From assembly GCF_032444005.1 (NCBI RefSeq), contig NC_091286.1, positions 34,844,001 through 34,908,000 of the forward strand: 64,000 bases of DNA. The letters run 5' to 3'. The DNA is from Ranitomeya imitator (lineage: Eukaryota). Each line of letters opens with the position of its first letter. Within the stretch, counting starts at the first letter, position 1. The notes below the pieces were generated by a model. The model searched no databases. It was given only the letters and a program-made list of their open reading frames with translations, and had not been told where the DNA came from. The position numbers were made by a program, and so were the translations under genes. This document shows positions 6,233 through 55,242 of this stretch, piece by piece.

Positions 6233-6374
6233 CGGCGATCGTCAGGATGAACAGGAGCGTGGACACCGCAGCAGTGCCGTAGAACATGATGCTGATGTTA
6301 TGTGCCGTCACGTGATAGTCTTCTGACCTCGGAACCAGCACGGGAGGGAGAAGGAACCCGATGGCCACGCCGAA
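6233..6374 (-). CDS. FLVCR1: FLVCR1 exon 2
   Basis: ctccacag| acceptor and G|gtgagt donor; 142 nt; encodes [47 protein letters not shown]; phases fit exons 1 and 3. Confidence 0.95.
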
Positions 6375-7430
6375 CTGTGGAGCAAAGAGAAGAGCCTGTA
6401 ACTGCAGCGCCATTATCCATCCAATGACATTAATGTGCAGTATAATGAGGCAATATCCCCGGAGATTTCACCATCGTATTAGCACCCGCTGATCCTGCAC
6501 TAAGTGCCATCCACAGAACATCCTACAATGAGATTGTGGACGTCACGCGCCCCTCTCCTGAGCCACAAGTATTTATACAGGGAGGAGACGGCTCCTCTGT
6601 TCTCACATCATTAGGCGGCATTTCCACTGAGATGATACTTTATAGTTCATAGAGAATGTAGCAAGAGATCCACATATATCGGCCCCTGGTCACCATCTGG
6701 GTGGTTTATGTTACATTTTTTTTATCAAAATGGCATATGATCAATTTGGTGCAATTACTAAGATGATTTTTCCCCCCCTTTTGCTTTATTTGCATTTTCA
6801 GAGTAAAAAGTAGAAATTTCAAGTGTTAGCCTTCAACTAAGGAAAGAAAAAAATAAATAAAAATTAAGACAGATTTTTGTTTCTACAATTGTGCAAAAAC
6901 TGTGGCGACACATCTCAGTAATGAATTAGTCACCAACATCTGGATAATGAAAACCATAGCGTAAAAGTGTCGCATGAGTCTTGAGTAAATTTGGCAAAAA
7001 AAATAAACAAAAAAAAACAAAAAACAAACTTGCACTACCAAAAATGAAAAAAACAAAACAAAACAGAAAGCATGATAAAATAGGTGCCCCAGAATGTGAG
7101 GTGGGGGGGTGTCACTATCTAGAGCGGGGGGCTCTGGGTATGGAGTTTTTCTCTACGGTCTTCTTTCCCATGCTAAGCTTTCGGCGATTTCTTGATGTTG
7201 CAGATTTCCTGCACCCAATAAGTAAAATCTGTTACTTGATTTTTTTTGCGAACATACGCAGCGTAAAAAAAAGTCACCATAACTTATTGTGGGAACGTAG
7301 CCTTATAGAAATTAGAATGCAGACAAAAAAAAAAAAAACCCAACCAATAAGTAGTTTTTGTCTCTTGAATTCTTTCCTCTCAATGTATTCCTAGGGACTG
7401 TTACACTACACAAGTGTGTGCCAGATGTGA

Positions 7431-8780: not shown

Positions 8781-8898
8781 GGGGGCCACAAGTGACGGCA
8801 CGACCCGGGGGGAAATTGGGCGCAGGTTGAGGGGGCCACAAGTGACGGCACGACCCGGGGGGAAATTGGGCGCAGGTTGAGGGGGCCACAAGTGACGG
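8781..8898. repeat. 50-bp tandem repeat, ~2.4 copies
   Basis: gggggccacaagtgacgg recurs at 8781, 8831 and 8881. Confidence 0.9.
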
Positions 8899-10887
8899 GT
8901 ACCACCAGTAGTATCAGCACCCGGCTGCCCCCCACCCCCCCCCCGCAGTAGTATCAGCCCCCGGCTGCCCCCCACCCGCCCCCCGCAGTAGTATCAGCCC
9001 CCGGCTGCCCCCCACCCGCCCCCCGCAGTAGTATCAGCCCCCGGCTGCCCCCCACCCGCCCCCCGCAGTAGTATCAGCCCCCGGCTGCCCCCCACCCGCC
9101 CCCCGCAGTAGTATCAGCCCCCGGCTGCCCTCTGCCCCCCGCAGTAGTATCAGCCCCCGGCTGCCCTCTGCCCCCCGCAGTAGTATCAGCCCCCGGCTGC
9201 CCTCTGCCCCCCGCAGTAGTATCAGCCCCCGGCTGCCCTCTGCCCCCCGCAGTAGTATCAGCCCCCGGCTGCCCTCTGCCCCCCGCAGTAGTATCAGCCC
9301 CCGGCTGCCCTCTGCCCCCCGCAGTAGTATCAGCCCCCGGCTGCCCTCTGCCCCCCGCAGTAGTATCAGCCCCCGGCTGCCCTCTGCCCCCCGCAGTAGT
9401 ATCAGCCCCCGGCTGCCCTCTGCCCCCCGCAGTAGTATCAGCCCCCGGCTGCCCTCTGCCCCCCGCAGTAGTATCAGCCCCCGGCTGCCCTCTGCCCCCC
9501 GCAGTAGTATCAGCCCCCGGCTGCCCTCTGCCCCCCGCAGTAGTATCAGCACCCGGCTGCCCTCTGCCCCCCGCAGTAGTATCAGCACCCGGCTGCCCTC
9601 TGCCCCCCGCAGTAGTATCAGCACCCGGCTGCCCTCTGCCCCCCGCAGTATCAGTACCCGGTTGCCCTCTGCCCCCCGCAGTATCAGTACCCGGCTGCCC
9701 TCTGCCCCCCGCAGTATCAGTACCCGGCTGCCCTCTGCCCCCCGCAGTAGTATCAGTACCCGGCTGCCCTCTGCCCCCCCGCAGTAGTATCAGTACCCGG
9801 CTGCCCTCTGCCCCCCGCAGTAGTATCAGTACCCGGTTGCCCTCTGCCCCCCGCAGTAGTATCAGTACCCGGTTGCCCTCTGCCCCCCGCAGTATCAGTA
9901 ACCGGCTGCCCTCTGCCCCCCGCAGTATCAGTACCCGGCTGCCCTCTGCCCCCCGCAGTAGTATCAGTACCCGGCTGCCCTCTGCCCCCCGCAGTAGTAT
10001 CAGTACCCGGCTGCCCTCTGCCCCCCGCAGTAGTATCAGTACCCGGTTGCCCTCTGCCCCCCGCAGTATCAGTACCCGGCTGCCCTCTGCCCCCCGCAGT
10101 ATCAGTACCCGGCTGCCCTCTGCCCCCCGCAGTAGTATCAGTACCCGGTTGCCCTCTGCCCCCCGCAGTATCAGTACCCGGCTGCCCTCTGCCCCCCGCA
10201 GTATCAGTACCCGGTTGCCCTCTGCCCCCCGCAGTATCAGTACCCGGCTGCCCTCTGCCCCCCGCAGTATCAGTACCCGGCTGCCCTCTGCCCCCCGCAG
10301 TAGTATCAGTACCCGGCTGCCCTCTGCCCCCCCGCAGTAGTATCAGTACCCGGCTGCCCTCTGCCCCCCGCAGTAGTATCAGTACCCGGTTGCCCTCTGC
10401 CCCCCGCAGTAGTATCAGTACCCGGTTGCCCTCTGCCCCCCGCAGTAGTATCAGTACCCGGTTGCCCTCTGCCCCCCGCAGTATCAGTAACCGGCTGCCC
10501 TCTGCCCCCCGCAGTATCAGTACCCGGCTGCCCTCTGCCCCCCGCAGTAGTATCAGTACCCGGCTGCCCTCTGCCCCCCGCAGTAGTATCAGTACCCGGT
10601 TGCCCTCTGCCCCCCGCAGTAGTATCAGTACCCGGTTGCCCTCTGCCCCCCGCAGTAGTATCAGTACCCGGTTGCCCTCTGCCCCCCGCAGTAGTATCAG
10701 TACCCGGTTGCCCTCTGCCCCCCGCAGTATCAGTACCCGGCTGCCCTCTGCCCCCCGCAGTATCAGTACCCGGCTGCCCTCTGCCCCCCGCAGTAGTATC
10801 AGTACCCGGCTGCCCTCTGCCCCCCGCAGTAGTATCAGTACCCGGCTGCCCTCTGCCCCCCGCAGTAGTATCAGTACCTGGTTGCCC
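8899..10887 (-). repeat. 33/36-bp minisatellite spanning the FLVCR1 exon1/intron1 junction (~55 units)
   Basis: Unit (minus strand) GTACTGATACTACTGCGGGGGGCAGAGGGCAGCCGG; distal units change to GTGC and then GGGC. Confidence 0.97.
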
Positions 10888-11507
10888 AGCACGGCGGTGG
10901 CACACGCAGTGGACACTTCCTTGGGACCGAACCACACGGACGCCACCTGGGAGGGCAGCCCGAGGATGAAGACCTGCGCCACCGAGCACACCACCTGGCC
11001 CAGCATGGTGACCGGGAAGAGGTCGGGCCGGGCGCTCGTGCACTTCACCCACGCCCCGAGGCAGTTGAGGCCGGAGCCCAGCAGCGCGGTGAGCCGCAGC
11101 CCCCGGGTGTCCAGCAGCCAGGTGGCCGGGAAGATGAGCGGGATGTAGGCCAGCATGTAGACCACGGACAGCCAGTCGATGTCCTGGTTGGAGACGCCGT
11201 AGAAGCCGGTGAAGATGGAGGCGAGGATGCTGTACTGGATCCACTGGAAGGCGTTCACCAGCGAGTAGAGCGAGAACACGGCCAGCACCAGGAAGCGCCG
11301 CCCGTACAGCCGGGTGTCCGGCACCGCCGCCGCCGCCGCCCCGGGGAGCATGGCTTGTGTCTCCTCCCGCACCGCCGGCTCCGTGCCGGGGCTCGCACAC
11401 ACCGTCACCACGGCGTCCCCGTCACTGCTCGGGCTGGCCAGGCCGTCCCCGCCGACCTCCTTCCCCAGTGGCAGCCCATTGTGGTGGGTCAGCTCTGTGG
11501 ACACCAT
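10878..11507 (-). CDS. FLVCR1: FLVCR1 exon 1 coding part (210 codons)
   Basis: ATG at 11507 in gcatcATGg context; encodes [29 protein letters not shown]...[15 protein letters not shown]; ends CAG|GTACTG at the same junction as human exon 1; CpG-rich. Confidence 0.95.
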
Positions 11508-12957: not shown

Positions 12958-13039
12958 TAATGGAGTGTGGGCGGTGCGTGGGTGGAGAGTGCGTGTCTGT
13001 GTGCGCGGGCAGGGTCTGTGCGTGACCGTTGGGGTATGT

Positions 13040-14100
13040 GTGGGCCTGCCGGGGGCTCTGTGCGGGCTGCCGGGGGCTCTGTGCGGGCTGCCGGGGGCTC
13101 TGTGCAAGCTGCCGGGGCTCTGTGCGGGCTGCCGGAGCTCTGTGCGGGCTGCCGGGGGCTCTGTGCGGGCTGCCGGGGCTCTGTGCGGGCTGCCGGAGCT
13201 CTGTGTGGGCTGCCGAGCGCTCTGTGCGGGCTGCCGGGGGCTCTGTGTGGGCTGCCGGGGCTCTGTGCGGGCTGCCGGAGCTCTGTGTGGGCTGCCGAGG
13301 GCTCTGTACGGGCTGCCGGGGGCTCTGTGCGGGCTGCCGGGGCTCTGTGCGGGCTGCCGGAGCTCTGTGCGGGCTGCCGGGGCTCTGTTCGTGCCTGCCG
13401 GGGGCTCTGTGCGGGCTGCCATGGGCTCTGTGCGGGCTGCCGGGGCTCTGTGCAGGCTGCCGGGGCTCTGTGTCGGCTGCCGGGGGTCTTTTCGTGCCTG
13501 CCGGGGGCTCTGTGCCGGCTGCCGGGGCTCTGTGCCGGCTGCCGGGGGTCTTTTCGTGCCTGCCGGGGGCTCTGTCAGGGCTGCCGGGGGCTCTGTGCGG
13601 GCTATACATATAGACATACAGTACATTAAACAAAGAGTACATACGGGCTGCCGGAGCTCTGTGCGGGCTGCCGGGGGCTCTGTGCGGGCTGCCGGGGCTC
13701 TGTGCGGGCTGCCGGAGCTCTGTGTGGGCTGCCGAGGGCTCTGTGCGGGCTGCCGGGGGCTCTGTGCGGGCTGCCGGAGCTCTGTGCGGGCTGCCGGGGC
13801 TCTGTGCGGGCTGCCGGGGCCCTGTTCTGGCTGCCGGGGGTCTGTTCCGGCTGCCGGGGGTCTGTTCGTGCCTGCCAGGGGCTCTGTGCGGGCTGCCATG
13901 GGCTCTGTGCGGGCTGCCGGGGCTCTGTGCAGGCTGCCGGGGCTCTGTGCCGGCTGCCGGGGGTCTTTTCGTGCCTGCCGGGGGCTCTGTGCCGGCTGCC
14001 GGGGCTCTGTGCCGGCTGCCGGGGGTCTTTTCGTGCCTGCCGGGGGCTCTGTGCGGGCTGCCGGGGGCTCTGTGCGGGCTGCCGGGGGCTCTGTGCGGGC
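13040..14100 (-). repeat. 20-21 bp GC-rich minisatellite, left arm
   Basis: (GGGCTCTGTGCGGGCTGCCG)n; includes a 498-bp internal duplication. Confidence 0.95.
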
Positions 14101-14599
14101 TATACATATAGACATACAGTACATTAAACAAAGAGTACATACTCACCATTACTTGTCACTTTGTTCCCCGAAGCCAGTGTCACCTATAAAAAAGATTAAA
14201 ATAACAAACAACCAATATACTCCCTGTCCGCAGAAATCCACGAGTGTCCCACGACGATTTCCCGTGCAGAACGGCAGCATCAGCTGATGCGACCGCTCTC
14301 CAGGGGCTCCAGGAACCTAATGACCGGCGAAGGTATCCTTCCGCACTGTATTCCTCCACCGCTATAAAAAATTAGTCCCTAGTCTCACTTTTGGCATTGC
14401 TGTGTGAGAAATTTTCCCACGCAGCAATTGCCATAAAGTGAGACTTTGAACTATAGTAACCTCAGTGATGCACTGCAGGAGCCATTGTCTCCTGTCAGTG
14501 TGTCACTGAGGGTCCTGTAGAGCAGTTACATCACCCGATGTCACTGTTCTATAGGGGAGATCATCGTGAGACACTCGTTATTAATTGGACTACGGCAGA

Positions 14600-17500
14600 C
14601 AGAGCCCCCGGCAGCCCGTACAGAGCTCCGGCAACCCGCACAGAGCCCCGGCAGCCCGCACAGAGCCCGGGCAGCCCGCACAAAGCCCCCGGCAGCCCAC
14701 ACAGAGCCCCCGGCTGGCACGCACAGACCCCCGGCAGCCCGCACAGAGCCCCGGCAGCCCGCACAGAGCCCCGGCAGCCCACACAGAGCCCCCGGCAGTC
14801 ATGCACAGACCCCCGGCAGCCTGCACAGAGCCCCCGGCAGGCACGCACAGACCCCCGGCAGGCACACACAGAGATCCGGCAGGCCGCACAGAGCCCCCGC
14901 AGCCCGCACAGAGCCCCCAGCAGTCACGCACAGAGCCCCGGCAGCCCGCACAGAGCCCCCAGCAGGCAGGCACAGACCCCCGGCAGCCCGCACAGAGCCC
15001 CAGCAGCCCCCACAGAGCCACCGGCAGGCACGCACAGACCCCCGGCAGTCCGCACAGAGCCCCAGCAGCCCCCACAGAGCCACCGGCAGGCATGCACAGA
15101 CCCCCGGCAGCCCGCACAGAGCCCCGGCAGCCCGCACAGAGCCCCGGCAGGCACGCACAGAGCTCCGGCAGGCACGCACAGAGCCCCGGCAGGCACGCAC
15201 AGACCCCCGGCAGCCCGCACAGAGCCCCGGCAGGCACGCACAGAGCTCCGGCAGGCACGCACAGAGCCCCGGCAGGCACGCACAGACCCCCGGCAGCCCG
15301 CACAGAGCCCCGGCAGCCCGCACAGAGCCCCGGTAGGCACGCACAGACCCCCGGCAACCCACACAGAGCCCCGGCAGCCCACACAGAGCCCCCGGCAGCC
15401 CACACAGAGCCCCCGGCAGTCACGCACAGACCCCCGGCAGCCTGCACAGACCCCTGGCAGCTTGCACAGAGCCCCGGCAGGCCCGCACAGACCTTTGGCA
15501 GCCGGCACAGAGCCCCGGCAGCCCGCACAGAGCCCCGGTAGGCCTGCATACAGCCCCGGCAGGCCCGCACAGAGCCCCTGCAAGCCCGCACAGAGCCCTG
15601 GCATCCCGCACAGAGCCCCAACAGACCCGTACAGACCCCCGGCAGCCCGCACAGAGCCCCGGTAGCCCGCACAGAGCCCCGGCAGCTTGCACAGAGCCCC
15701 GGCAGCCTGCACAGAGCCCCAGCAGCCCGCACAGAGCCCCAGCAGCCCGCACAGAGCCCCGGCAGCTTGCACAGAGCCCCGGCAGCCTGCACAGAGCCCC
15801 AGCAGCCCGCACAGAGCCCCGGTAGCCCGCACAGAGCCCCGGCAGCCTGCACAGAGCCCCGGCAGCCCGCACAGAGCCCCCGGCAGGCACGCACAGACCC
15901 CCGGCAGCCCGGACAGACCCCCGGCAGTCCGCACAGAGCCCCGGCAGCCCCCACAGAGCCACCGGCAGGCACGCACAGACCCCCGGCAGTCCGCACAGAG
16001 CCCCAGCAGCCCCCACAGAGCCACCGGCAGGCACGCACAGACCCCCGGCAGCCCGCACAGAGCCCCGGCAGCCCGCACAGAGCCCCGGCAGGCACGCACA
16101 GAGCTCCGGCAGGCACGCACAGAGCCCCGGCAGGCACGCACAGACCCCCGGCAGCCCGCACAGAGCCCCGGCAGGCACGCAGAGCCCCGGCAGGCACGCA
16201 CAGAGCTCCGGCAGGCACGCACAGAGCCCCGGCAGGCACGCACAGACCCTCGGCAGCCCGCACAGAGCCCCGGCAGCCCGCACAGAGCCCCGGCAGGCAC
16301 GCACAGAGCCCCCGGTAGGCACGCACAGACCCCCGGCAACCCACACAGAGCCCCGGCAGCCCACACAGAGCCCCCGGCAGCCCACACAGAGCCCCCGGCA
16401 GTCACGCACAGACCCCCGGCAGCCTGCACAGACCCCTGGCAGCTTGCACAGAGCCCCGGCAGGCCCGCACAGACCTTCGGCAGCCGGCACAGAGCCCCGG
16501 CAGCCCGCACAGAGCCCCGGTAGGCCTGCACACAGCCCCGGCAGGCCCGCACAGAGCCCCTGCAAGCCCGCACAGAGCCCTGGCAGCCCGCACAGAGCCC
16601 CAACAGACCCGTACAGACCCCCGGCAGCCCGCACAGAGCCCCGGTAGCCCGCACAGAGCCCCGGCAGCTTGCACAGATCCCCGGCAGCCTGCACAGAGCC
16701 CCAGCAGCCCGCACAGAGCCCCGGTAGCCCGCACAGAGCCCCGGCAGCCTGCACAGAGCCCCAGAAGCCCGCACAGAGCCCCCGGCAGGCACGCACAGAC
16801 CCCCGGCAGCCCGGACAGAGCCCCGGCAGCCCGAACAGAGCCCCGGCAGCCCGCACAGAGCCCCGGCAGCCCGCACAGAGCCACCGGCAGGCACGCACAG
16901 ACCCCCGGCAGGCACGCACAGACCCCCGGCAGGCACGCACAGACACCGGCAGCACGCACAGACCCCGGCAGCCCGCACAGAGCCCCCGGCAGGCACGCAC
17001 AGATCCCCGGCAGCCCACACAGAGCCCCGGCAGCCGGCACAGAGCCCCCGCAGCCCGCACAGAGCCCCCGGCAGTCACGCACAGACCCCCGGCAGCCCGC
17101 ACAGAGCCCCGGGCAGGCAGGCACAGACCCCCGGCAGCCCGCACAGAGCCCTGGCAGCCCGCACAGAGCCACCGGCAGGCACGCACAGACCCCCGGCAAC
17201 CCACACAGAGCCCCGGCAGCCCGCACAGAGCTCCGGTAGGCACGCACAGAGCCCCGGTAGCCCGCACAGAGCCCCCAGTAGGCACGCACAGACCCCCGCC
17301 AACCCACACAGAGCCCCGGCAGCCCGCACAGAGCCCCGGCAGCCCACACAGAGCCCCTGCAGACCGCACAGAGCCCCCGGCAGTCACGCACAGACCCCCG
17401 GCAGCCTGCACAGACCCCCGGGCAGCTTGCACAGAGCCCTGGCAGGCCCGCACAGACCTTCGGCAGCCGGTACAGAGCCCCGGCAGCTCGCACAGAGCCC

Positions 17501-17725
17501 CGGCAGGCACGCACAGACCCCCGGCAGCCCGCACAGAGCCCCGGCAGCCCCGCACAGAGCCCCGGCAAGCCCGCACAGAGCCCTGGCAGCCCGCACAGAG
17601 CCCCAACAGACCCGTAGAGACCCCCGGCAGCCCGCACAGAGCCCCGGTAGCCAGCACAGAGCCCCGGCAGCCCGCACAGAGCCCCGGCAGCCCGCACAGA
17701 GCCCCGGCAGGCCAGCACAGACCCC
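14600..17725 (+). repeat. 20-21 bp GC-rich minisatellite, right arm (inverted relative to the left arm)
   Basis: (CGGCAGCCCGCACAGAGCCC)n with variant units. Confidence 0.95.
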
Positions 17726-19534
17726 GCCCGCACACAGAGATATGCACAGTGTCCGCCCATGCACCACCCACACTCTTCCCCCCTTCGGAACAGAATGTAG
17801 AAGGACAGAAAGGGCTTATTTATATTCCGATATTTGTGTCCCATTGACTTGCATTGGTACCGGGTATCGGCGATATCCGATATTGTTTGGATATCGGCCG
17901 ATCCAATCTGATACCGATACTTTTGGATATCGGAAGGTATCGCTCAACACTAATCGTTAAATATGATTGGCTAGTGCAACATCTTCAGGCTATAATGTAT
18001 GCAAATGAGTGATGAAGGATAGCCAGTCAGGTGGCTGCTTTGATTCTGTGACCTTTATTGATACAAATGAGAGCTGTAATGTGATTGGTTGCAATTATCA
18101 TCCCCTTTGTAGAGTTTTTTTTTCTTTTATTATTTATTATATTGTTTCCGTATTAATCAAGAAATTCATTTCGTGCATATTAGAACTGAGCAAAAAGATC
18201 TGTAGGTTCCCTATCCCTAGTCTGTGACCACAGGACCAGACTCCTGCCAGTCTCCTCCTACCTGCCGAAATCCGTGCTACCTTTTGTGCAGCAGTGGTCG
18301 GTCTCCAAGGCAACAAGTTGGACGTAAACTTTTAATATCCAAAAAACGGCTGGAAATGTTAATAAACAGTAAATTGCAAAGTTGCTCGTGTGACGATATC
18401 CATTAGAAAGGAAAAACCCTGACTGTGATCCAAGATATCGTGTCATTGTGTCCGCTCCCCACTCAGGAATAACACACTGTTGTCATTTTTCTATCACTTT
18501 GTATTTTTATGATATAAAATGGTATAGTATTTATTTATTTGCATGAGGGGGAACACAATTTATACGTGCATTTTTTTCAGTGTTGATCGACTACCGTACC
18601 AGTCAGTGGCCATTCATTCACTACCCATGGGCCGCCAGAAACAGTAAGAACGATCATTAATAGCGGGCCAGGCTTCAGCATTATCTGGGCCTTTGGGCTA
18701 TAGAGACGCCGTGGGCTTCTCCTCGCTGTCAGTTTTTTCTCATCACGTTCCAAATGCCTTTTTTTTTTTTTGCAAGACGAATTGGAATATCAGGATACAT
18801 CATTCAGTCCCACAGATACGCACAAGGCAATATCAAATATTTCATTTTTTTTAACGTTTTTATTTACATTACTGAAAAAAAGGGTATTTTAATTTTTATA
18901 GATGTATTTTTCTTATTATTTTTTTTAAATATTTTACAATTGTTTTATTAGCCTTTTTTACCTAACGATGCCATCGGCAACAAGGGTGGGAGGGCAGGTG
19001 GGATAAATTCAAACTTTTTAAATGCCGCTGGCATGACTAACGGTGGCAAGTAAGGGGTTAAATTGCTATGACCGGATCTAGTTTTATCACCAATGGTAAT
19101 CTGGACCAAGTGGGATCCCCAGATGCATTGGACTCCGACATTTCCCAGGTTCGCCAGGTGTCGTCGCCCCTCATTAATAATATGATCTGTCCTTAGTCAC
19201 CATCACGTTGCCATGGCGATACGCTGCCGACCATAATGATTTTTATGCCGAAATAAAGGATCCAGTCGCCTGATGAGTGGCGGCTCCCAGTGAAAATAAT
19301 CAGGACCGATTCTGCCCGTATGAAAGGGTCTGTAGTGAATATCGTCACCATTTCGATTCTATATGTGGGTGCAAAATTCTGTTGCTAATTAATTTCTTAA
19401 TATTCCTTTACAAAGGTTAAAATTGTCCAATTTATTTAGAAAAATTGCAATTTTTTTTCCTTTGGGTGGAGGATGGAGGCAAATTTTCTAGTAGGAAAAG
19501 GGTTACAGTCCTGCACTAGTTGATATGGGAAAAG

Positions 19535-41116: not shown

Positions 41117-41443
41117 GATGCTCCATACAGTATAATGACCGCACACGATGCTGGGTACAGTATAATGGCCCCACACGATGCTGGGTACAGTATAATGGCC
41201 CCACACGATGCTGGGTACAGTATAATGGCCCCACACGATGCTGGGTACAGTATAATGGCCCCACACGATGCTGGGTACAGTATAATGGCCCCACACGATG
41301 CTGGGTACAGTATAATGGCCCCACACGATGCTGGGTACAGTATAATGGCCCCACACGATGCTGGGTACAGTATAATGGCCCCACACGATGCTGGGTACAG
41401 TATAATGGCCCCACACGATGCTGGGTACAATATAATGGCCACA
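41117..41443. repeat. 30-bp tandem repeat, ~10.5 copies
   Basis: (TATAATGGCCCCACACGATGCTGGGTACAG)n, near-identical units. Confidence 0.97.
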
Positions 41444-41687
41444 TATGGTTACCCCACCCCCATCATTGCCTTCTCCATAACTACACACACACACCTTTCA
41501 CCACGCACCCTCGCAGCAGCCGGCAGCTTCCACTCCCACGGCGCTGAATGGTGTCATCCAGCTGCGCCGCTGACTGCTCACGTCGCTGCATCTGTGATAC
41601 GCCACTGATAAAGACCTCCGTGTCTCCTGTGCCAGTCCGTGTCAGAGCGAGGAGCAACATCTGCTCCGATCCGACTCAGCCAGCGTC

Positions 41688-43935
41688 TGCTCCGTACACC
41701 TCGTACACACACAACTCTGCTCCATACACCTTGCACATGCGGCTCCACTCCGTACACCTCGTACACACACGGCTCCTCTCCGTACACCTCGTACGCACAC
41801 GGCTCCTCTCCGTACATCTCGTACGCACACGGCACCGCTCCGTACACCTCGTACACACACGCCTCCTCTCCGTACACCTCGTACACACACGGCTCCGCTC
41901 CGTACACCTCGTACACACACGGCTCCGCTCCGTACACCTCGTACACACACGGCTCCGCTCCGTACACCTCGTACACACACGGCTCCGCTCCGTACACCTC
42001 GTACACACACGGCTCAGCTCCGTACACCTCGTACGCACACGGCTCCTCTCCGTACATCTCGTACGCACACGGCACCGCTCCGTACACCTCGTACACACAC
42101 GCCTCCTCTCCGTACACCTCGTACACACACGGCTCCGCTCCGTACACCTCGTACACACACGGCTCCGCTCCGTACACCTCGTACACACACGGCTCCGCTC
42201 CGTACACCTCGTACACACACGGCTCCGCTCCGTACACCTCGTACACACACGGCTCCGCTCCGTACACACGGCTCCGCTCCGTACACCTCGTACACACACG
42301 GCTCCGCTCCGTACACCTCTTACACACAAGGCTCCGCTCCATACACCCCGTACACACGTCTGCCCTCCATACACCTTGCACATGCGTCTCCTCTCCGTAC
42401 ACCTCGTACACTCGGCTCCGCTCCATACACATTGCACACGCTGCTCCGCTCCGTATACCTTGCACACACACGGCTCCGCTCCGTACACCTCATACACACA
42501 CGGCTCCTCTCCATATATCTCGTACACACATGGCACTACTCCGTACACCTCGTACACACACGGCTCCGCTCCATACACATTGCACACGCTGCTCTGCTCC
42601 GTATACCTTGCACACACACGGCTCCGTACACCTCATACACACACGGATCCTCTCCATACATCTCGTACACACACGGGACCACTCCGTGCACCTCGTACAC
42701 ACATGGCTCCGCTCTATACACATTGCACACGCTGCTCCGCTTCGTATACCTTGTACACACATGGCTCTGCTCCACACACCTCGTACACACGTGGCTCTGC
42801 TCTGTACAACTCGCACACACGTGGCTCTGCTCTGTACAACTCGTACACACGTGGCTCCGCTCCGAACACCTCGTACACACACGACTCTGCTCCATACACC
42901 TTTCACACTCTGCTCCGATCCGCACACCTCTTACACACATGGCTCCGCTCTGTACTCGTCTTACACACACGACTCTGCTCCATACACCTTTCACACGCTG
43001 CTCCGTACACCTCGTACACACAGCTCCGTACACCTCGTACACACGGCTCCGTACACCTCTTACACACACGACTCTGCTCCATACACCTTTCACACTCTGC
43101 TCCGATCCGCACACCTCTTACACACATGGCTCCGCTCCGTACTCGTCTTACACACACGACTCCGCTCCATACACCTTTCACACGCTGCTCCGTACACCTC
43201 GTACACAGGAGGCTGTGCTCCGTACACCTCATGCACACGGCTCCGTACTCATCTTATACACACGACTCCGCTCCATACACCTTTCACACGCTGCTCCGTA
43301 CACCTCGTACACAGGAGGCTGTGCTCCGTACACCTCATACACACACACGACTCCGCTCCATACACCTCTTACACACACACGACTCCGCTCCATACACCTT
43401 TCACACGCTGCTCCGTACACCTCGTACACAGGAGGCTGTGCTCCGTACACCTCATGCACACGGCTCCATACTCGTCTTACACACGCGACTCCGCTCCATA
43501 CACCTTTCACACGCTGCTCCGTACACCTCGTACACAGGAGGCTGTGCTCCGTACACCTCATACACACGGCTCCGTACACCTCTTACACACACACGACTCC
43601 GCTCCATACACCTTTCACACGCTGCTCCGTACACCTCGTATACAGGAGGCTGTGCTCCGTACACCTCATGCACACGGCTCCATACTCGTCTTACACACAC
43701 GACTCCGCTCCATACACCTTTCACACGCTGCTCCGTACACCTCGTACACAGGAGGCTGTGCTCCGTACACCTCATACACACACATGACTCCGCTCCATAC
43801 ACCTTTCACATGCTGCTCCAATCCGTAGAAGTCGTACACACGCGGCTGTACTCTGTACACCTCATGCACACGGCTCCGCTCCATACACCTTTCGCACGCT
43901 GCTCCGATCCATACACCTCGTACACACACGACTCT
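41688..43935. repeat. Complex ~30-bp minisatellite with higher-order blocks
   Basis: (CTCCGTACACCTCGTACACACACGGCTCCG)n diverging into longer composite units. Confidence 0.93.
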
Positions 43936-44574
43936 GCTACATCCACACTGTAAACACCTCCTGTCCTGACCTCACACATACGTTTACCCTCGTCCGGCGC
44001 CATGGCAACGAGCAGAGTCCTGTACAGAGGTCCTCCCGATCATGTGACCCCTGACTCCTCCCATCCTGTGACCTCACCTCATCACAGGTTCTGTGCGCAC
44101 AGATCAGCCAATATGTGGTGTGCTGCTCTGCGGGTGCAGGGACTCAGGGAGCCGACTGGGTGATATACACACCTCCCAACCAGTGCGGGACAACTAATGT
44201 CCCGCCCGGGATCGCGGGGCTGACTGTCAAAATCAGGAGAGTCCCGCTGGATCCGGGACGGTTGGAAGGTATGCAATGGCCGGTGGTGCAGAGCTCACTG
44301 ACACCAGCGCAGTCATGACATTTCTTCCTCTTAAATCGTCCTTCATCTCCTATGACTGATATTATTGAGAAGTGGAAGGAACTGCAGCAACTCAGCCACA
44401 AAGTGGAGTCACCATAACGTTACAGAGCGGGGGGCCAAGTGCTGAGGAGCAGAGGTCAGAAAAGTCACCACCGCTCTGCTGACCCCATATCTGCAGAGTC
44501 CAGACCTCCTCTGGTATAACATCAACACTAACACTGCGCCATAAGCTTCATATCCGAGCAGCTGCATGCAGCCG

Positions 44575-46346: not shown

Positions 46347-47881
46347 CTAGATGGTGGCCTGATTCTAACGCATCAGGTATTCTAGAATATGCATGTCCAC
46401 GTAGTATATTGCCCAGCCACGTAGTATATTGCCCAGCCACGTAGTATATTGCCCAGCCACGTAGTGTATTGCCCAGCCACGTAGTATATTGCCCAGCCAC
46501 CTAGTATATTGCCCAGCCACGTAGTGTATTGCCCAGCCACGTAGTATATTGCCCAGCCACGTAGTATATTGCCCAGCCACGTAGTATATTGCCCAGTCAC
46601 GTAGTATATTGCCCAGCCACGTAGTATATTGCCCAGTCACGTAGTATATTGCCCAGCCACGTAGTATATTGCCCAGCCACGTAGTATATTGCCCAGCCAC
46701 CTAGTATATTGCCCAGCCACGTAGTATATTGCCCAGCCACCTAGTATATTGCCCAGCCACGTAGTATATTGCCCAGCCACGTAGTATATTGCCCAGTCAC
46801 GTAGTATATTGCCCAGCCACGTAGTATATTGCCCAGTCACGTAGTATATTGCCCAGCCACGTAGTATATTGCCCAGCTACGTAGTATATTGCACAGCCAC
46901 CTAGTATATTGCCCAGCCACGTAGTATATTGCCCAGCCACGTAGTGTATTGCCCAGCTACGTAGTATATTGCACAGCCACCTAGTATATTGTCCAGCCAC
47001 CTAGTATATTGCCCAGCCACCTAGTATATTGCCCAGCCACCTAGTATATTGCCCAGCCACGTAGTGTATTGCCCAGCTACGTAGTATATTGCACAGCCAC
47101 CTAGTATATTGTCCAGCCACCTAGTATATTGCACAGCCACCTAGTATATTGCCCAGCCACCTAGTATATTGCCCAGCCACCTAGTATATTGCCCAGCCAC
47201 CTAGTATATTGCCCAGCCACCTAGTATATTGCCCAGTCACGTATGTAACAGGTTAAAAAAGACTTAAAATAAAAAAATAAACATATACTCCCCTTCCGAG
47301 GGGCGCCTTGTAGTCCTGGCACCTGTTTGCGGTGCACGCAGCAGCTTCCGGTCCCAGGGTTGGTATGACCGCAGGACCTGTGATGACGTCGCGGTCACAT
47401 GACCGTGACGTCATGGAAGGTCCTTCTCGCATAGCATCCTTGGCACCGGAACCTGCCGCTTGCACAGAGAGGGCACGACAGCGCAGGGTGAGAATAACGT
47501 TTTTTTTATTATTATTATGATTTGTAACATTAGATTTTTTTACTATTGATGCTGCATACGCATCATCAATAGTAAAAAGTTGGGGACACACAGGGTTAAT
47601 AGCTGCGTTAATGGAGTGCGTTACACCGTGGCATAACGCCGTCCATTAACGCTGCCATTAACCCTGTGTGAGCGCTGACTGGAGGGGAGTATGGAGCGGG
47701 CGCTGACTGCGGGGAGTAAGGAGCAGCTATGTTGCCGCCGGACTGTGGCTGTCGCTGATTGGTCGTGGGCGTTTTGCCACAACCAATCAGCGACTTGGAT
47801 TTCCATGACAGACAGAGGCTGCGACCAATGAATATTCGCGACAGACAGACGGAAGTGACCCTTAGACAACTATATAGTACA
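46347..47881 (-). mobile_element. Non-autonomous Helitron
   Basis: Minus strand: A|T(G)TACTATATA ... hairpin CCTGAT-8nt-ATCAGG ... CCACCATCTAG|T; A/T target and no TSD; 5' end reads TG rather than the canonical TC. Confidence 0.75.
46397..47242. repeat. 20-bp tandem repeat inside the Helitron, ~42 copies
   Basis: (GTAGTATATTGCCCAGCCAC)n. Confidence 0.97.
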
Positions 47882-49537: not shown

Positions 49538-49960
49538 AGGAGGTGAGCTGTGATATCACCTATTGTGAATGGTGGATCCTGTGTTATCTACTGTATATAG
49601 AGGTGCTATCAGTCATTTTATAGGAGGAGGAGGTGAGCTGTGACCTCACCTATTGTGAGTGGTGGATCCTGTGTTATCTACTGTATATAGAGGTGCTATC
49701 AGTCATTGTATAGGAGGAGGAGGTGAGCTGTGACCTTACCTATTGTGAGTGGTGGATCGTGTGTTATCTACTGTATATAGAGGTGTTATCGGTCATTGTA
49801 CAGGAGGAGGAGGTGAGCTGTGACATCTTCTATTGTGAATGGCGGATCCTGTGTTATCTACTGTATATAGAGGCGTTATCAGTCATTGTACAGGAGGAGG
49901 AGGTGAGCTGTGATATCACTTATTGTGAATGGTGGATCCTGTGTTACCTACTGTATACAG
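49538..49960. repeat. 90-bp tandem repeat, ~4.7 copies
   Basis: aggtgagctg recurs at 49541, 49631, 49721, 49811 and 49901. Confidence 0.95.
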
Positions 49961-50678
49961 AGTATATATGGCACCAATACCCCCTCCCATACCTGTTTTT
50001 CTGGTCCCAGGGCGGGGGAGTCTGTTTCCAAGCAGATGTTCTCTAGCGGAAGCTGCTTCACAAGTTTCTGCTTCTTAAAGAAATGAGAAATAAATTACAT
50101 ATAATACTGATGGCGGATGTTCTACAAATTATGTTCTTTACAAGTAGTATAAACTAGAGGGACACCAGACTGGCACAAATAGTTTCTGATTTTCATTGCA
50201 TTATTCATTAGTACTGATTCCGTGTTACAGTCTGTGTTAAAATCCAAGGCTGTATTTCCCATACTCCAGGCTTCAGAGCTGAACTCTAGCAGCTGGACTG
50301 CTGTAGCCTAGGAGATGGTGGAGTTATGTTTTCCCGCTAAAGGACTAAGATGCACAGTGTCCTTATCTGAAGAACTTGCACAGGAGCGACGATTTCCTAT
50401 CGCAATGTTGTGGGCAATGCCCTGCTATTAAACCCTGGGTCCTGGCATCATGTGGATAGATAACGTTGCACAAACAAAGTACCAATGCACCTGCTGCACT
50501 ACAATAAATGGCCAAGAATGGGGAGAGGAACAGATGAAGATTTCAAGGTGCTGTTTTGGCAGCAGGAGGAAGACCTACGTAATATTAGGTGCTCATCTGT
50601 GTATATGGGTTGTAGTGTAGTAATGACCAGATGGCAGCCATCCTCACAAATTAAAGAATCGTTCTCTTCTTCCTATAC

Positions 50679-53123: not shown

Positions 53124-55242
53124 CAAAGACCCGCCCCCACTTACTGTATGAAGGCAAAGACCCGCCCTCACTTCCTATATGAAGGCAAAGACCCGCCCTC
53201 ACTTCCTATATGAAGGCAAAGACCCGCCCTCACTTCCTATATGAAGGCAAAGACCCGCCCTCACTTCCAATATGAAGGCAAAGACCTGCCTCACTTCCTA
53301 TATGAAGGCAAAGACTCGCCCTCACTTCCTATATGAAGGCAAAGACCCGCCCTCACTTCCTATATGAAGGCAAAGACCCGCCCTCACTTCCTATATGAAG
53401 GCAAAGACTCGCCCTCACTTCCTATATGAAGGCAAAGACCCGCCCTCACTTCCAATATGAAGGCAAAGACCCGCCTCACTTCCTATATGAAGGCAAAGAC
53501 TCGCCCTCACTTCCTATATGAAGGCAAAGACTCGCCCTCACTTCCTATATGAAGGCAAAGACCCGCCCTCACTTCCTATATGAAGGCAAAGACCCGCCCT
53601 CACTTCCTATATGAAGGCAAAGACCCGCCCTCACTTCCTATATGAAGGCAAAGACTCGCCCTCACTTCCTATATGAAGGCAAAGACCCGCCCTCACTTCC
53701 AATATGAAGGCAAAGACCCGCCTCACTTCCTATATGAAGGCAAAGACTCGCCCTCACTTCCTATATGAAGGCAAAGACTCGCCCTCACTTCCTATATGAA
53801 GGCAAAGACCCGCCCTCACTTCCTATATGAAGGCAAAGACCCGCCCTCACTTCCTATATGAAGGCAAAGACCCGCCCTCACTTCCTATATGAAGGCAAAG
53901 ACCCGCCCTCACTTCTTATATGAAGGCAAAGACCCGCCCTCACTTCCTATATGAAGGCAAAGACCCGCCCTCACTTCCTATATGAAGGCAAAGACCCGCC
54001 CTCACTTCCTATATGAAGGCAAAGACCCGCCCTCACTTCCTATATGAAGGCAAAGACCCGCCCTCACTTCCTATATGAAGGCAAAGACCCGCCCTCACTT
54101 CCTATATGAAGGCAAAGACCCGCCCTCACTTCCTATATGAAGGCAAAGACCCGCCCTCACTTCCTATATGAAGGCAAAGACCCGCCCTCACTTCCTATAT
54201 GAAGGCAAAGACCCGCCCTCACTTCCTATATGAAGGCAAAGACCCGCCCTCACTTCCTATATGAAGGCAAAGACCCGCCCTCACTTCCTATATGAAGGCA
54301 AAGACCCGCCTCACTTCCTATATGAAGGCAAAGACCCGCCCTCACTTCCTATATGAAGGCAAAGACCCGCCCTCACTTCCTATATGAGGGCAAATACCCG
54401 CCCTCACTTCCTATATGAAGGCAAAGACCCGCCCTCACTTCCTATATGAAGGCAAAGACCCGCCCTCACTTCCTATATGAAGGCAAAGACCCGCCCTCAC
54501 TTCCTATATGAAGGCAAAGACCCGCCCTCACTTCCTATATGAGGGCAAAGACCCGCCCTCACTTCTTATATGAAGGCAAAGACCCGCCCTCACTTCCTAT
54601 ATGAGGGCAAAGACCCGCCCTCACTTCCTATATGAAGGCAAAGACCCACCCTCACTTCTTATATGAAGGCAAAGACCCGCCCTCACTTCCTATATGAGGG
54701 CAAAGACCCGCCCTCACTTCCTATATGAAGGCAAAGACCCACCCTCACTTCCTATATGAAGGCAAAGACCCACCCTCACTTCCTATATGAGGGCAAATAC
54801 CTGCCCTCACTTCCTATATGAGGGCAAAGACCCACCCTCACTTCCTATATGAAGGCAAAGACCCGCCCTCACTTCCTATATGAGGGCAAATACCTGCCCT
54901 CACTTCCTATATGAGGGCAAAGACCCGCCCTCACTTCCTATATGAAGGCAAAGACCCACCCTCACTTCCTATATGAAGGCAAATACCTGCCCTCACTTCC
55001 TATATGAGGGCAAAGACCCACCCTCACTTCCTATATGAAGGCAAATACCTGCCCTCACTTCCTATATGAGGGCAAAGACCCGCTCTCACTTCCTATATGA
55101 AGGCAAAGACCCACCTCACTTCCTATATGAAGGCAAAGACCCACCCTCACTTCCTATATGAGGGCAAATACCTGCCCTCACTTCCTATATGAGGGCAAAT
55201 ACCTGCCCCCACTTCCTATATGAAGACCTGCCCCCACTTCCT
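53124..55242. repeat. 31-bp minisatellite in TATDN3 intron 5, ~68 copies
   Basis: (AAGGCAAAGACCCGCCCTCACTTCCTATATG)n. Confidence 0.97.

What the first reader, a model, noticed from the sequence alone, without database searches (positions are those of the whole stretch)
8899..10890. FLVCR1 intron 1 begins with a minisatellite made from its own splice junction: an array of in-frame alternative donors
Seen: exon 1 ends GGGCAACCAG|GTACTGATACTACTGCGGGGGGCAGA. The repeat unit is this first ~26 nt of intron plus a copy of the last 10 exon bases (GGGCA[A/G]CCGG), so the junction itself was amplified. About 35 proximal units carry CGG|GTACTG. Units are 33 or 36 nt, so every donor is phase 0, and the first 15 are in frame with no stop ([12 protein letters not shown])n until a 7-G run at ~10330. 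Distal units lose the GT (GTAC to GTGC to GGGC). Established: the human junction falls right after N245-Q246 in TM5, near the reported choline-binding site. Inference: slippage to any of the first 15 donors would give NMD-immune isoforms with 11-12 aa x n inserted in TM5, so array length could act as a VNTR tuning functional FLVCR1. Only the authentic site has A at -2, which may be what keeps splicing faithful.
Basis: partly seen in the sequence, partly recalled or inferred. Interest (0 to 1): 0.72.

Follow-up and report, generated by a model that had tools for sequence, protein, structure and literature searches.

The report
Splice-donor minisatellite in frog FLVCR1 intron
A 2-kb tandem repeat that grew out of the exon 1/intron 1 boundary of the mimic poison frog's choline transporter gene FLVCR1 puts 33 look-alike splice-start signals behind the real one; this kind of repeat is already known from human genes, I could not get RNA data to see whether the copies are used, but six other frogs carry a different repeat at the same spot.

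Summary
On the minus strand, FLVCR1 exon 1 (11507-10878) ends with the codons for N-Q, aligned to human N245-Q246. A 36-nt array of 55.7 copies (8906-10887) starts 10 nt inside the exon. It carries 33 copies of CGG|GTACTG behind the single authentic CAG|GTACTG. Fourteen of these are in frame and stop-free.

The window is Ranitomeya imitator: its exon 1 is 100% identical to that species' RefSeq FLVCR1.

It is a new member of a known kind, the junction-spanning splice-donor VNTR (human F7 intron 7, IFI6, ABCA7 intron 18). The scan has already noted at least eight such arrays in other genes of this same genome.

Indirect evidence is against it:
- all 15 frog FLVCR1 protein models checked join NQ to exon 2;
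- in F7 only the first of several identical donors is used;
- unit lengths in other frogs (28 to 82 nt) show no bias to multiples of three.

New here: all six other neobatrachian frogs examined have a tandem array within -12 to +75 nt of this same donor. Other donors of the same genes have one in 3 of 62 cases. Spea has none.

The parts
10878..11507 (-). FLVCR1 exon 1 coding part (210 codons, phase 0 at its end; ends G-N-Q)
   Evidence: Translation; Pfam MFS_1; PDB hits human FLVCR1 263 bits versus FLVCR2 204 bits, ending at Q246; 100% identical to R. imitator RefSeq FLVCR1, P0124. GC 69%, CpG o/e 0.77.
10872..10880 (-). Authentic 5' splice site CAG|GTACTG, a weak site
   Evidence: It is the only 9-mer with A at -2. 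U1 duplex -7.1 kcal/mol against -14.0 for the consensus and -11.3 for the exon 2 donor.
8906..10887 (-). Whole minisatellite, 56 units, first unit spanning the exon/intron boundary
   Evidence: TRF: period 36, 55.7 copies, 96% matches, score 3003. Unit map. Sense strand 47% G, GC skew +0.37.
10350..10877 (-). Units 1-15: in frame with exon 1 and stop-free (11-12 residues per unit); the 14 in-frame GTACTG pseudo-donors lie at 10841 to 10349
   Evidence: phases, read-through translation.
9625..10349 (-). Units 16-36: still GTACTG-bearing but out of frame. The 37-nt units with 7-G runs start at 10349 and 9796.
   Evidence: The block of units 9-20 is repeated as units 26-36 with one unit missing.
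9517..9624 (-). Units 37-39 with GTGCTG
8921..9516 (-). Units 40-55 without GT at the junction position (GGGCTG). Units 51-55 are 40 nt and each holds a canonical G-quadruplex motif.
8906..8920 (-). Terminal partial unit (GTGCTG type) where the array runs out into unique intron
6233..6374 (-). FLVCR1 exon 2 (acceptor ...ccacag| at 6375; donor CCG|GTGAGT)
   Evidence: tblastn of P0124.

Best explanation
This is a junction-spanning intronic minisatellite.

Origin (inferred). A short segment covering the last 10 bases of FLVCR1 exon 1 and the first 15 to 26 bases of intron 1 was duplicated in tandem. It then expanded by unequal exchange or slippage, including duplications of whole 11-12-unit blocks. 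Every unit therefore carries a copy of the 5' splice site.

Splicing (inferred, not shown). The copies are most likely silent or nearly silent decoys. The spliceosome takes the first site, which is also marginally the best, as shown experimentally for the identical arrangement in human F7 intron 7. The in-frame unit length is incidental.

Cross-species pattern (shown). The array is the local form of something older. The 5' end of this intron holds a tandem array in every neobatrachian frog examined, with different units. The site itself is therefore a long-lived tandem-repeat hotspot, or is repeatedly re-seeded.
For: - Array anatomy and junction origin.
- Authentic and copied donors differ by only 0.7 kcal/mol in U1 pairing and about 2.4 bits in a rough position matrix. 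Both are weak.
- All five dendrobatid FLVCR1 models, including two separate R. imitator annotations, and ten other frog models join GNQ to exon 2. The R. imitator RefSeq entry carries no isoform label.
- A 386-residue read-through query found no database protein containing the repeat peptide.
- Precedent, F7 intron 7: a 37-bp VNTR whose first unit spans the junction. Its pseudo-sites are functional, but only the most upstream one is used (PMC1557585).
- Minisatellites cover 19.3% of this window.
- Earlier scan notes list at least 8 other donor-derived arrays in this genome. Where RNA could be seen, only the first donor was used. These are leads I did not check.
- Cross-species: six of six other neobatrachians have an array at -12 to +75 nt from this donor, against 3 of 62 other donors in the same genes.
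- Exact junction copies: Engystomops 4 (plus 2 partial), Mixophyes 4, Mantella 20.
- Unit lengths are 28 to 82 nt and the consensus units are mostly not alignable between species.
Against:
- The authentic site is unusually weak, which should make leakage to the copies easier than in F7.
- In IFI6 and ABCA7, repeat-borne donors are used at a low level.
- Gene models collapse rare isoforms, so annotation is weak evidence of absence.
- The cross-species sample is seven loci. If the array is ancestral, they are not independent.
Confidence: 0.65

Rival explanations
1. One reading: some of the 14 in-frame, stop-free pseudo-donors are used. This gives NMD-immune FLVCR1 isoforms with n x 11-12 residues inserted after the Q246 equivalent in TM5, so array length acts as a VNTR that sets the share of functional transporter.
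For: - The geometry is right: phase 0 and no stop through unit 15.
- The authentic donor is weak and barely better than the copies.
- IFI6 uses two downstream repeat units as in-frame donors (Turri 1995, as cited in PMC4526556).
- ABCA7 retains one VNTR unit in about 2% of transcripts (PMC5954066).
Against: - No isoform with the repeat peptide appears in any annotation or in the protein collection.
- F7 shows strict first-site choice even among identical sites.
- Unit length is not a multiple of three in 5 of the 6 other frog arrays at this junction.
- The insert would break a helix that carries a substrate-pocket residue (inference). It could only lower dosage, not tune function.
Confidence: 0.2
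2. The array acts through its bulk rather than its donors. A 2-kb stretch that is G-rich on the non-template strand, right after a CpG-island first exon, could form R-loops or G-quadruplexes, or bind G-run splicing factors. It would then set transcription or exon 1 splicing efficiency in a length-dependent way, as ABCA7 VNTR length does.
For: - Sense strand 47% G, GC skew +0.37, 7 canonical and 42 long-loop G4 motifs.
- ABCA7 VNTR length correlates with lower expression and exon skipping.
- An array persists at this junction across frogs.
Against: - The Mantella and Mixophyes arrays are AT/TG-rich, not G-rich, so no common composition is conserved.
- Nothing here measures expression.
Confidence: 0.12
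3. The array length or its fine structure is an assembly artefact.
For: - Long tandem arrays and homopolymer runs are error-prone.
- I could not lay DNA reads on it.
Against: - There are no N in the window.
- The array has an ordered variant structure with a duplicated 11-12-unit block that carries the rare variants along.
- Similar arrays stand at the same place in six independently assembled frog genomes.
Confidence: 0.03

Closest known systems
Human F7 intron 7 37-bp VNTR (Borensztajn et al. 2006, PMC1557585)
   Same: The first unit of an intronic minisatellite spans the exon/intron boundary, so the true donor is followed by a row of look-alike donors. Some of the F7 copies would also keep the frame.
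   Different: F7 has 5-9 sites identical to the true one. Here there are 33 copies that differ at -2, the true site is much weaker, and the exon is a first exon. Silence of the copies is shown for F7 and only inferred here.
Human IFI6 (6-16) minisatellite providing multiple splice donors (Turri et al. 1995, cited in PMC4526556)
   Same: A junction-borne repeat with in-frame units.
   Different: In IFI6 two downstream units are really used and give three mRNAs. Use is unknown here. I could not read the original paper.
Human ABCA7 intron 18 25-bp VNTR (De Roeck et al. 2018, PMC5954066)
   Same: The VNTR begins at the donor GT of the upstream exon, and kilobase-long alleles occur. It is a precedent for array length affecting expression and splicing.
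   Different: The ABCA7 unit is out of frame, so retaining one unit gives a premature stop (about 2% of transcripts). The length effect there is on skipping of the next exon. Nothing comparable was measured here.
Other donor-derived minisatellites noted by this scan in the same genome (EMC1, NECAP1, STT3A, PIF1, TBC1D10B, LRRC36, ABCA3)
   Same: Same genome and same architecture.
   Different: Those are internal introns. This one follows a CpG-island first exon. It is also the only one for which other species were compared, as far as the notes say. I did not check those loci.

Membership tests
Junction-spanning splice-donor minisatellite (F7 / IFI6 / ABCA7 type) | Tandem array whose first unit overlaps the exon/intron boundary | tested here: met
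   TRF array 8906-10887 overlaps the last 10 exon bases; 9 of these 10 bases recur in the units.
Junction-spanning splice-donor minisatellite (F7 / IFI6 / ABCA7 type) | Downstream units carry copies of the 5' splice-site sequence | tested here: met
   33 copies of CGG|GTACTG; exact match to the junction extends 11-60 nt on the intron side.
Junction-spanning splice-donor minisatellite (F7 / IFI6 / ABCA7 type) | Known splicing behaviour of the copies (silent as in F7, or used as in IFI6) | not testable with these tools
Only indirect evidence exists: the annotations use the first site.
Junction-spanning splice-donor minisatellite (F7 / IFI6 / ABCA7 type) | Length polymorphism between individuals (VNTR) | not tested
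   DNA of the second R. imitator assembly and of three other dendrobatids could not be fetched because the files were too large.
FLVCR1 (SLC49A1) orthologue | MFS fold and closest similarity to FLVCR1 rather than FLVCR2 | tested here: met
   Pfam MFS_1. PDB: FLVCR1 263 bits, FLVCR2 204 bits. 100% identity to R. imitator RefSeq FLVCR1 over exon 1.
G-quadruplex / R-loop-prone intronic repeat | Runs of G on the non-template strand in canonical G4 spacing | tested here: inconclusive
   Only 7 canonical motifs, 5 of them in the distal 40-nt units. Most units have three G-tracts and need a 16-19-nt loop.

The most novel reading that the evidence does not exclude
The 5' end of FLVCR1 intron 1 is a tandem-repeat hotspot that has stayed occupied through the history of neobatrachian frogs. 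Its units turn over but are repeatedly re-seeded from the splice junction itself.

Two causes are possible. One is a stable recombination hotspot at the CpG-island first exon; amphibians appear to lack PRDM9 (PMC5519329), so hotspots would be expected at promoter-like features. The other is a selected role of an array in defining this exon. If other junction-borne arrays of this genome behave the same way, splice junctions would be preferred and durable nucleation sites for minisatellites in frogs.
Probability: 0.3. Interest if true: 0.7.

Novelty: new member of a known kind. Interest (0 to 1): 0.45.

Why it matters
As a single locus it is one more natural array of competing 5' splice sites. 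It is unusual in three ways: the true site is weak, 14 copies are in frame, and the insertion point sits beside the substrate pocket of an essential choline/ethanolamine transporter. That makes it a good natural test of first-site versus best-site donor choice.

The wider point is the cross-species result. A noncoding minisatellite at the same junction in seven frogs from five families (Dendrobatidae, Strabomantidae or Craugastoridae, Leptodactylidae, Hylidae, Mantellidae) plus the myobatrachoid Mixophyes is not what fast-turnover repeats are expected to do. It could give a handle on what makes a site a lasting repeat hotspot.

Tried and rejected
- **RNA test.** I would not have laid reads on the 2-kb array in any case, because that tool states that it turns long repeats away.
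- **Relatives' DNA.** DNA of R. variabilis, the second R. imitator assembly and D. tinctorius could not be fetched because the files were too large. The Gastrophryne gene range was too long. Xenopus laevis was not on record.
- **Read-through protein search**. It found only ordinary FLVCR1 proteins. The one longer hit, P0059, is a mammalian intron-retention ORF unrelated to the repeat.
- **Homology of units between species**. Mostly not significant (z 0-2.5). The high scores come from TG or TA microsatellite parts, or from a 10-nt motif taken from the intron start. I therefore do not claim that the arrays are one conserved sequence.
- **G-quadruplex as the common theme.** Rejected, because the Mantella and Mixophyes arrays are not G-rich.
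- **Other steps that failed.** Turri 1995 could not be read. The CBS 31-bp VNTR could only be confirmed to exist; its junction-spanning nature rests on my memory.

Full report
**What is there**

Read on the minus strand, the window holds the first three coding exons of FLVCR1:
- exon 1, 11507-10878;
- exon 2, 6374-6233;
- exon 3, near 221-57.

Exon 1 translates to 210 residues with a Pfam MFS_1 match. It matches solved human FLVCR1 better than FLVCR2 (263 against 204 bits) and ends exactly at the residue aligned to human Q246. It is 100% identical to the RefSeq FLVCR1 of Ranitomeya imitator (P0124), so the window comes from the mimic poison frog. Exons were searched one at a time.

Exon 1 ends GGGCAACCAG and the intron opens GTACTG. 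Tandem Repeats Finder reports one array at 8906-10887: period 36, 55.7 copies, 96% matches. It reaches 10 bases into the exon.

I parsed 56 units:
- Units 1-36 are 33 or 36 nt. The difference is one ACT triplet. They keep GTACTG, except units 12 and 29 (GTTACT).
- Units 16 and 32 are 37 nt because of a 7-G run.
- Units 37-39 read GTGCTG.
- Units 40-55 read GGGCTG and so have no GT at the junction position.
- Units 51-55 are 40 nt.
- A 25-nt partial unit ends the array.

There are 33 copies of CGG|GTACTG and one CAG|GTACTG, the true site. Fourteen GTACTG copies (10841 to 10349) are in phase 0 with no stop, adding 11 or 12 residues per unit. After the first 7-G run the copies are in phase 1, and after the second in phase 2. 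The read-through frame stays open to 9755.

Written as unit types, the map shows a 12-unit block (units 9-20) repeated as units 26-36 with one unit missing. This block carries both the 7-G unit and the GTTACT unit. The array therefore grew partly by multi-unit duplication, and the 7-G runs are probably real variants.

**Origin**

Nine of the last ten exon bases recur at the end of every unit. Homology stops beyond that (read by eye). The array runs out after the first 15 intron bases of a unit.

The simplest history is a tandem duplication of a segment spanning the junction, followed by expansion. Q246 is CAG in the exon and CGG in all copies. The A-to-G change therefore predates the expansion, or has swept through the array. 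Both steps are inference.

**Strength of the sites**

| Site | U1 5'-end pairing (kcal/mol) |
|---|---|
| True site, CAG\|GTACTG | -7.1 |
| Copies, CGG\|GTACTG | -6.4 |
| Exon 2 donor | -11.3 |
| Consensus donor | -14.0 |

**Is it used?**

The indirect evidence is as follows:
- Two independent R. imitator annotations, R. variabilis, Dendrobates tinctorius, Phyllobates terribilis and ten further frogs all join GNQ to F/L-G of exon 2.
- The R. imitator RefSeq product carries no isoform label.
- A 386-residue query made of exon 1 plus 15 read-through units found no protein with the repeat peptide.

Gene models hide rare isoforms, so this is weak evidence.

**What is known**

- Human F7 intron 7 has a 37-bp VNTR whose first unit spans the junction. 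The pseudo-sites work when tested, yet only the most upstream site is used, even against stronger copies (PMC1557585).
- IFI6 uses two downstream repeat units as donors and makes three mRNAs (cited in PMC4526556).
- The ABCA7 intron 18 VNTR starts at the donor GT. One-unit retention makes up about 2% of transcripts. VNTR length goes with lower expression and exon 19 skipping (PMC5954066).

The kind is therefore known, including the idea that length matters.

Earlier notes of this scan list at least eight more donor-derived arrays in this same genome. Where RNA was seen, only the first donor was used. These are leads I did not check. Minisatellites fill 19.3% of this window, so the raw material is abundant.

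**Consequence of an insert**

Asn245 is one of six substrate-pocket residues mutated in the FLVCR1 structure paper (PMC10557757).

By the offset seen, FLVCR1 Q246 equals FLVCR2 Q223. That lies between S212 (TM5) and N239 (the TM5-6 loop) named in PMC11168923. The junction is therefore inside TM5.

Each unit would add a hydrophobic stretch followed by two Arg and one Glu. I infer loss of function rather than tuning.

**New: other frogs**

I fetched the FLVCR1 locus of seven other frogs. The exon ends CAG in all of them.

| Species | Array | Start relative to donor | Donor-like copies |
|---|---|---|---|
| Pristimantis euphronides | 40 nt x 96 | +75 | 87 x CAG\|GTGTGT |
| Leptodactylus fuscus | 28 nt x 89.5 | +14 | 17 x CAG\|GTAATG |
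| Dendropsophus ebraccatus | 31-36 nt, about 38 copies | +17 | only weak sites |
| Engystomops pustulosus | 82 nt x 4.4 | -12 | 4 exact copies of 12 exon bases plus the donor, and 2 partial |
| Mixophyes fleayi | 57 nt x 2.8 | 0 | 4 copies of the first 25-47 intron bases |
| Mantella aurantiaca | 41 nt x 17.8 | +17 | 20 copies of the first 9-13 intron bases |
| Spea bombifrons | none | - | - |

The table rests.

- Spea keeps the same GTACTG hexamer as R. imitator and Dendropsophus, which is therefore probably ancestral.
- As a control, only 3 of 62 other exon ends in these loci have an array within 120 nt. All three are in the Engystomops locus, which has extra exon-like matches.
- Consensus units are mostly not alignable between species. 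They share only a roughly 10-nt motif from the intron start, or microsatellite parts.

Position is conserved and sequence is not. Either one old array has turned over in place, or arrays keep being born here. I cannot tell which. If the array is ancestral, the seven species are not independent samples.

Unit lengths (28, 31, 36, 40, 41, 57, 82) show no preference for multiples of three. This argues that the in-frame property in R. imitator is chance.

**A possible cause, inferred only**

Exon 1 is a CpG island (GC 69%, CpG o/e 0.77). PRDM9 was not found in amphibians. Species without it direct recombination to promoter-like features (PMC5519329). A stable hotspot there could keep a neighbouring minisatellite active.

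**Verdict**

The structure is a new, large member of a known kind. The proposed isoform tuning is untested and, on balance, unlikely. The conserved position of an array at this junction across neobatrachian frogs is the part worth following up.

Noticed in passing
window 8781-8898: A perfect 50-nt tandem repeat (2.4 copies, 100% matches) lies directly after the end of the FLVCR1 array, inside intron 1.
   Followed up: no
window 13037-14101 and 14599-17726: Two GC-rich 20-nt minisatellites (about 51 and 153 copies) lie upstream of the FLVCR1 promoter. Their units are reverse complements of each other, so they form a large inverted pair about 500 nt apart.
   Followed up: partly
window 41126-43938, 46397-47243, 49538-49962, 53124-55225: Further large minisatellites with 20-, 30-, 31- and 90-nt units. 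Together with the others, arrays make up 19.3% of the 64-kb window.
   Followed up: no
L004 28218-30710 (Engystomops pustulosus): A second called gene of 460 residues with an MFS_1 hit lies as one uninterrupted range inside the FLVCR1 gene. The FLVCR1 protein gives 18 matches instead of about 10 in this locus. This may be a retrocopy or an internal duplication.
   Followed up: no
L006 2779-4843 (Mantella aurantiaca): A second, unrelated 31-nt x 66.5 minisatellite lies deeper in the same intron 1. Arrays make up 20.6% of this 85-kb locus.
   Followed up: no
protein P0059: A 314-residue protein predicted from a Logan run assembly, which I take to be mammalian from its sequence. It reads from FLVCR1 exon 1 straight on after GNQ into non-FLVCR1 sequence. 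This is consistent with intron 1 retention and with the same exon boundary in mammals.
   Followed up: no
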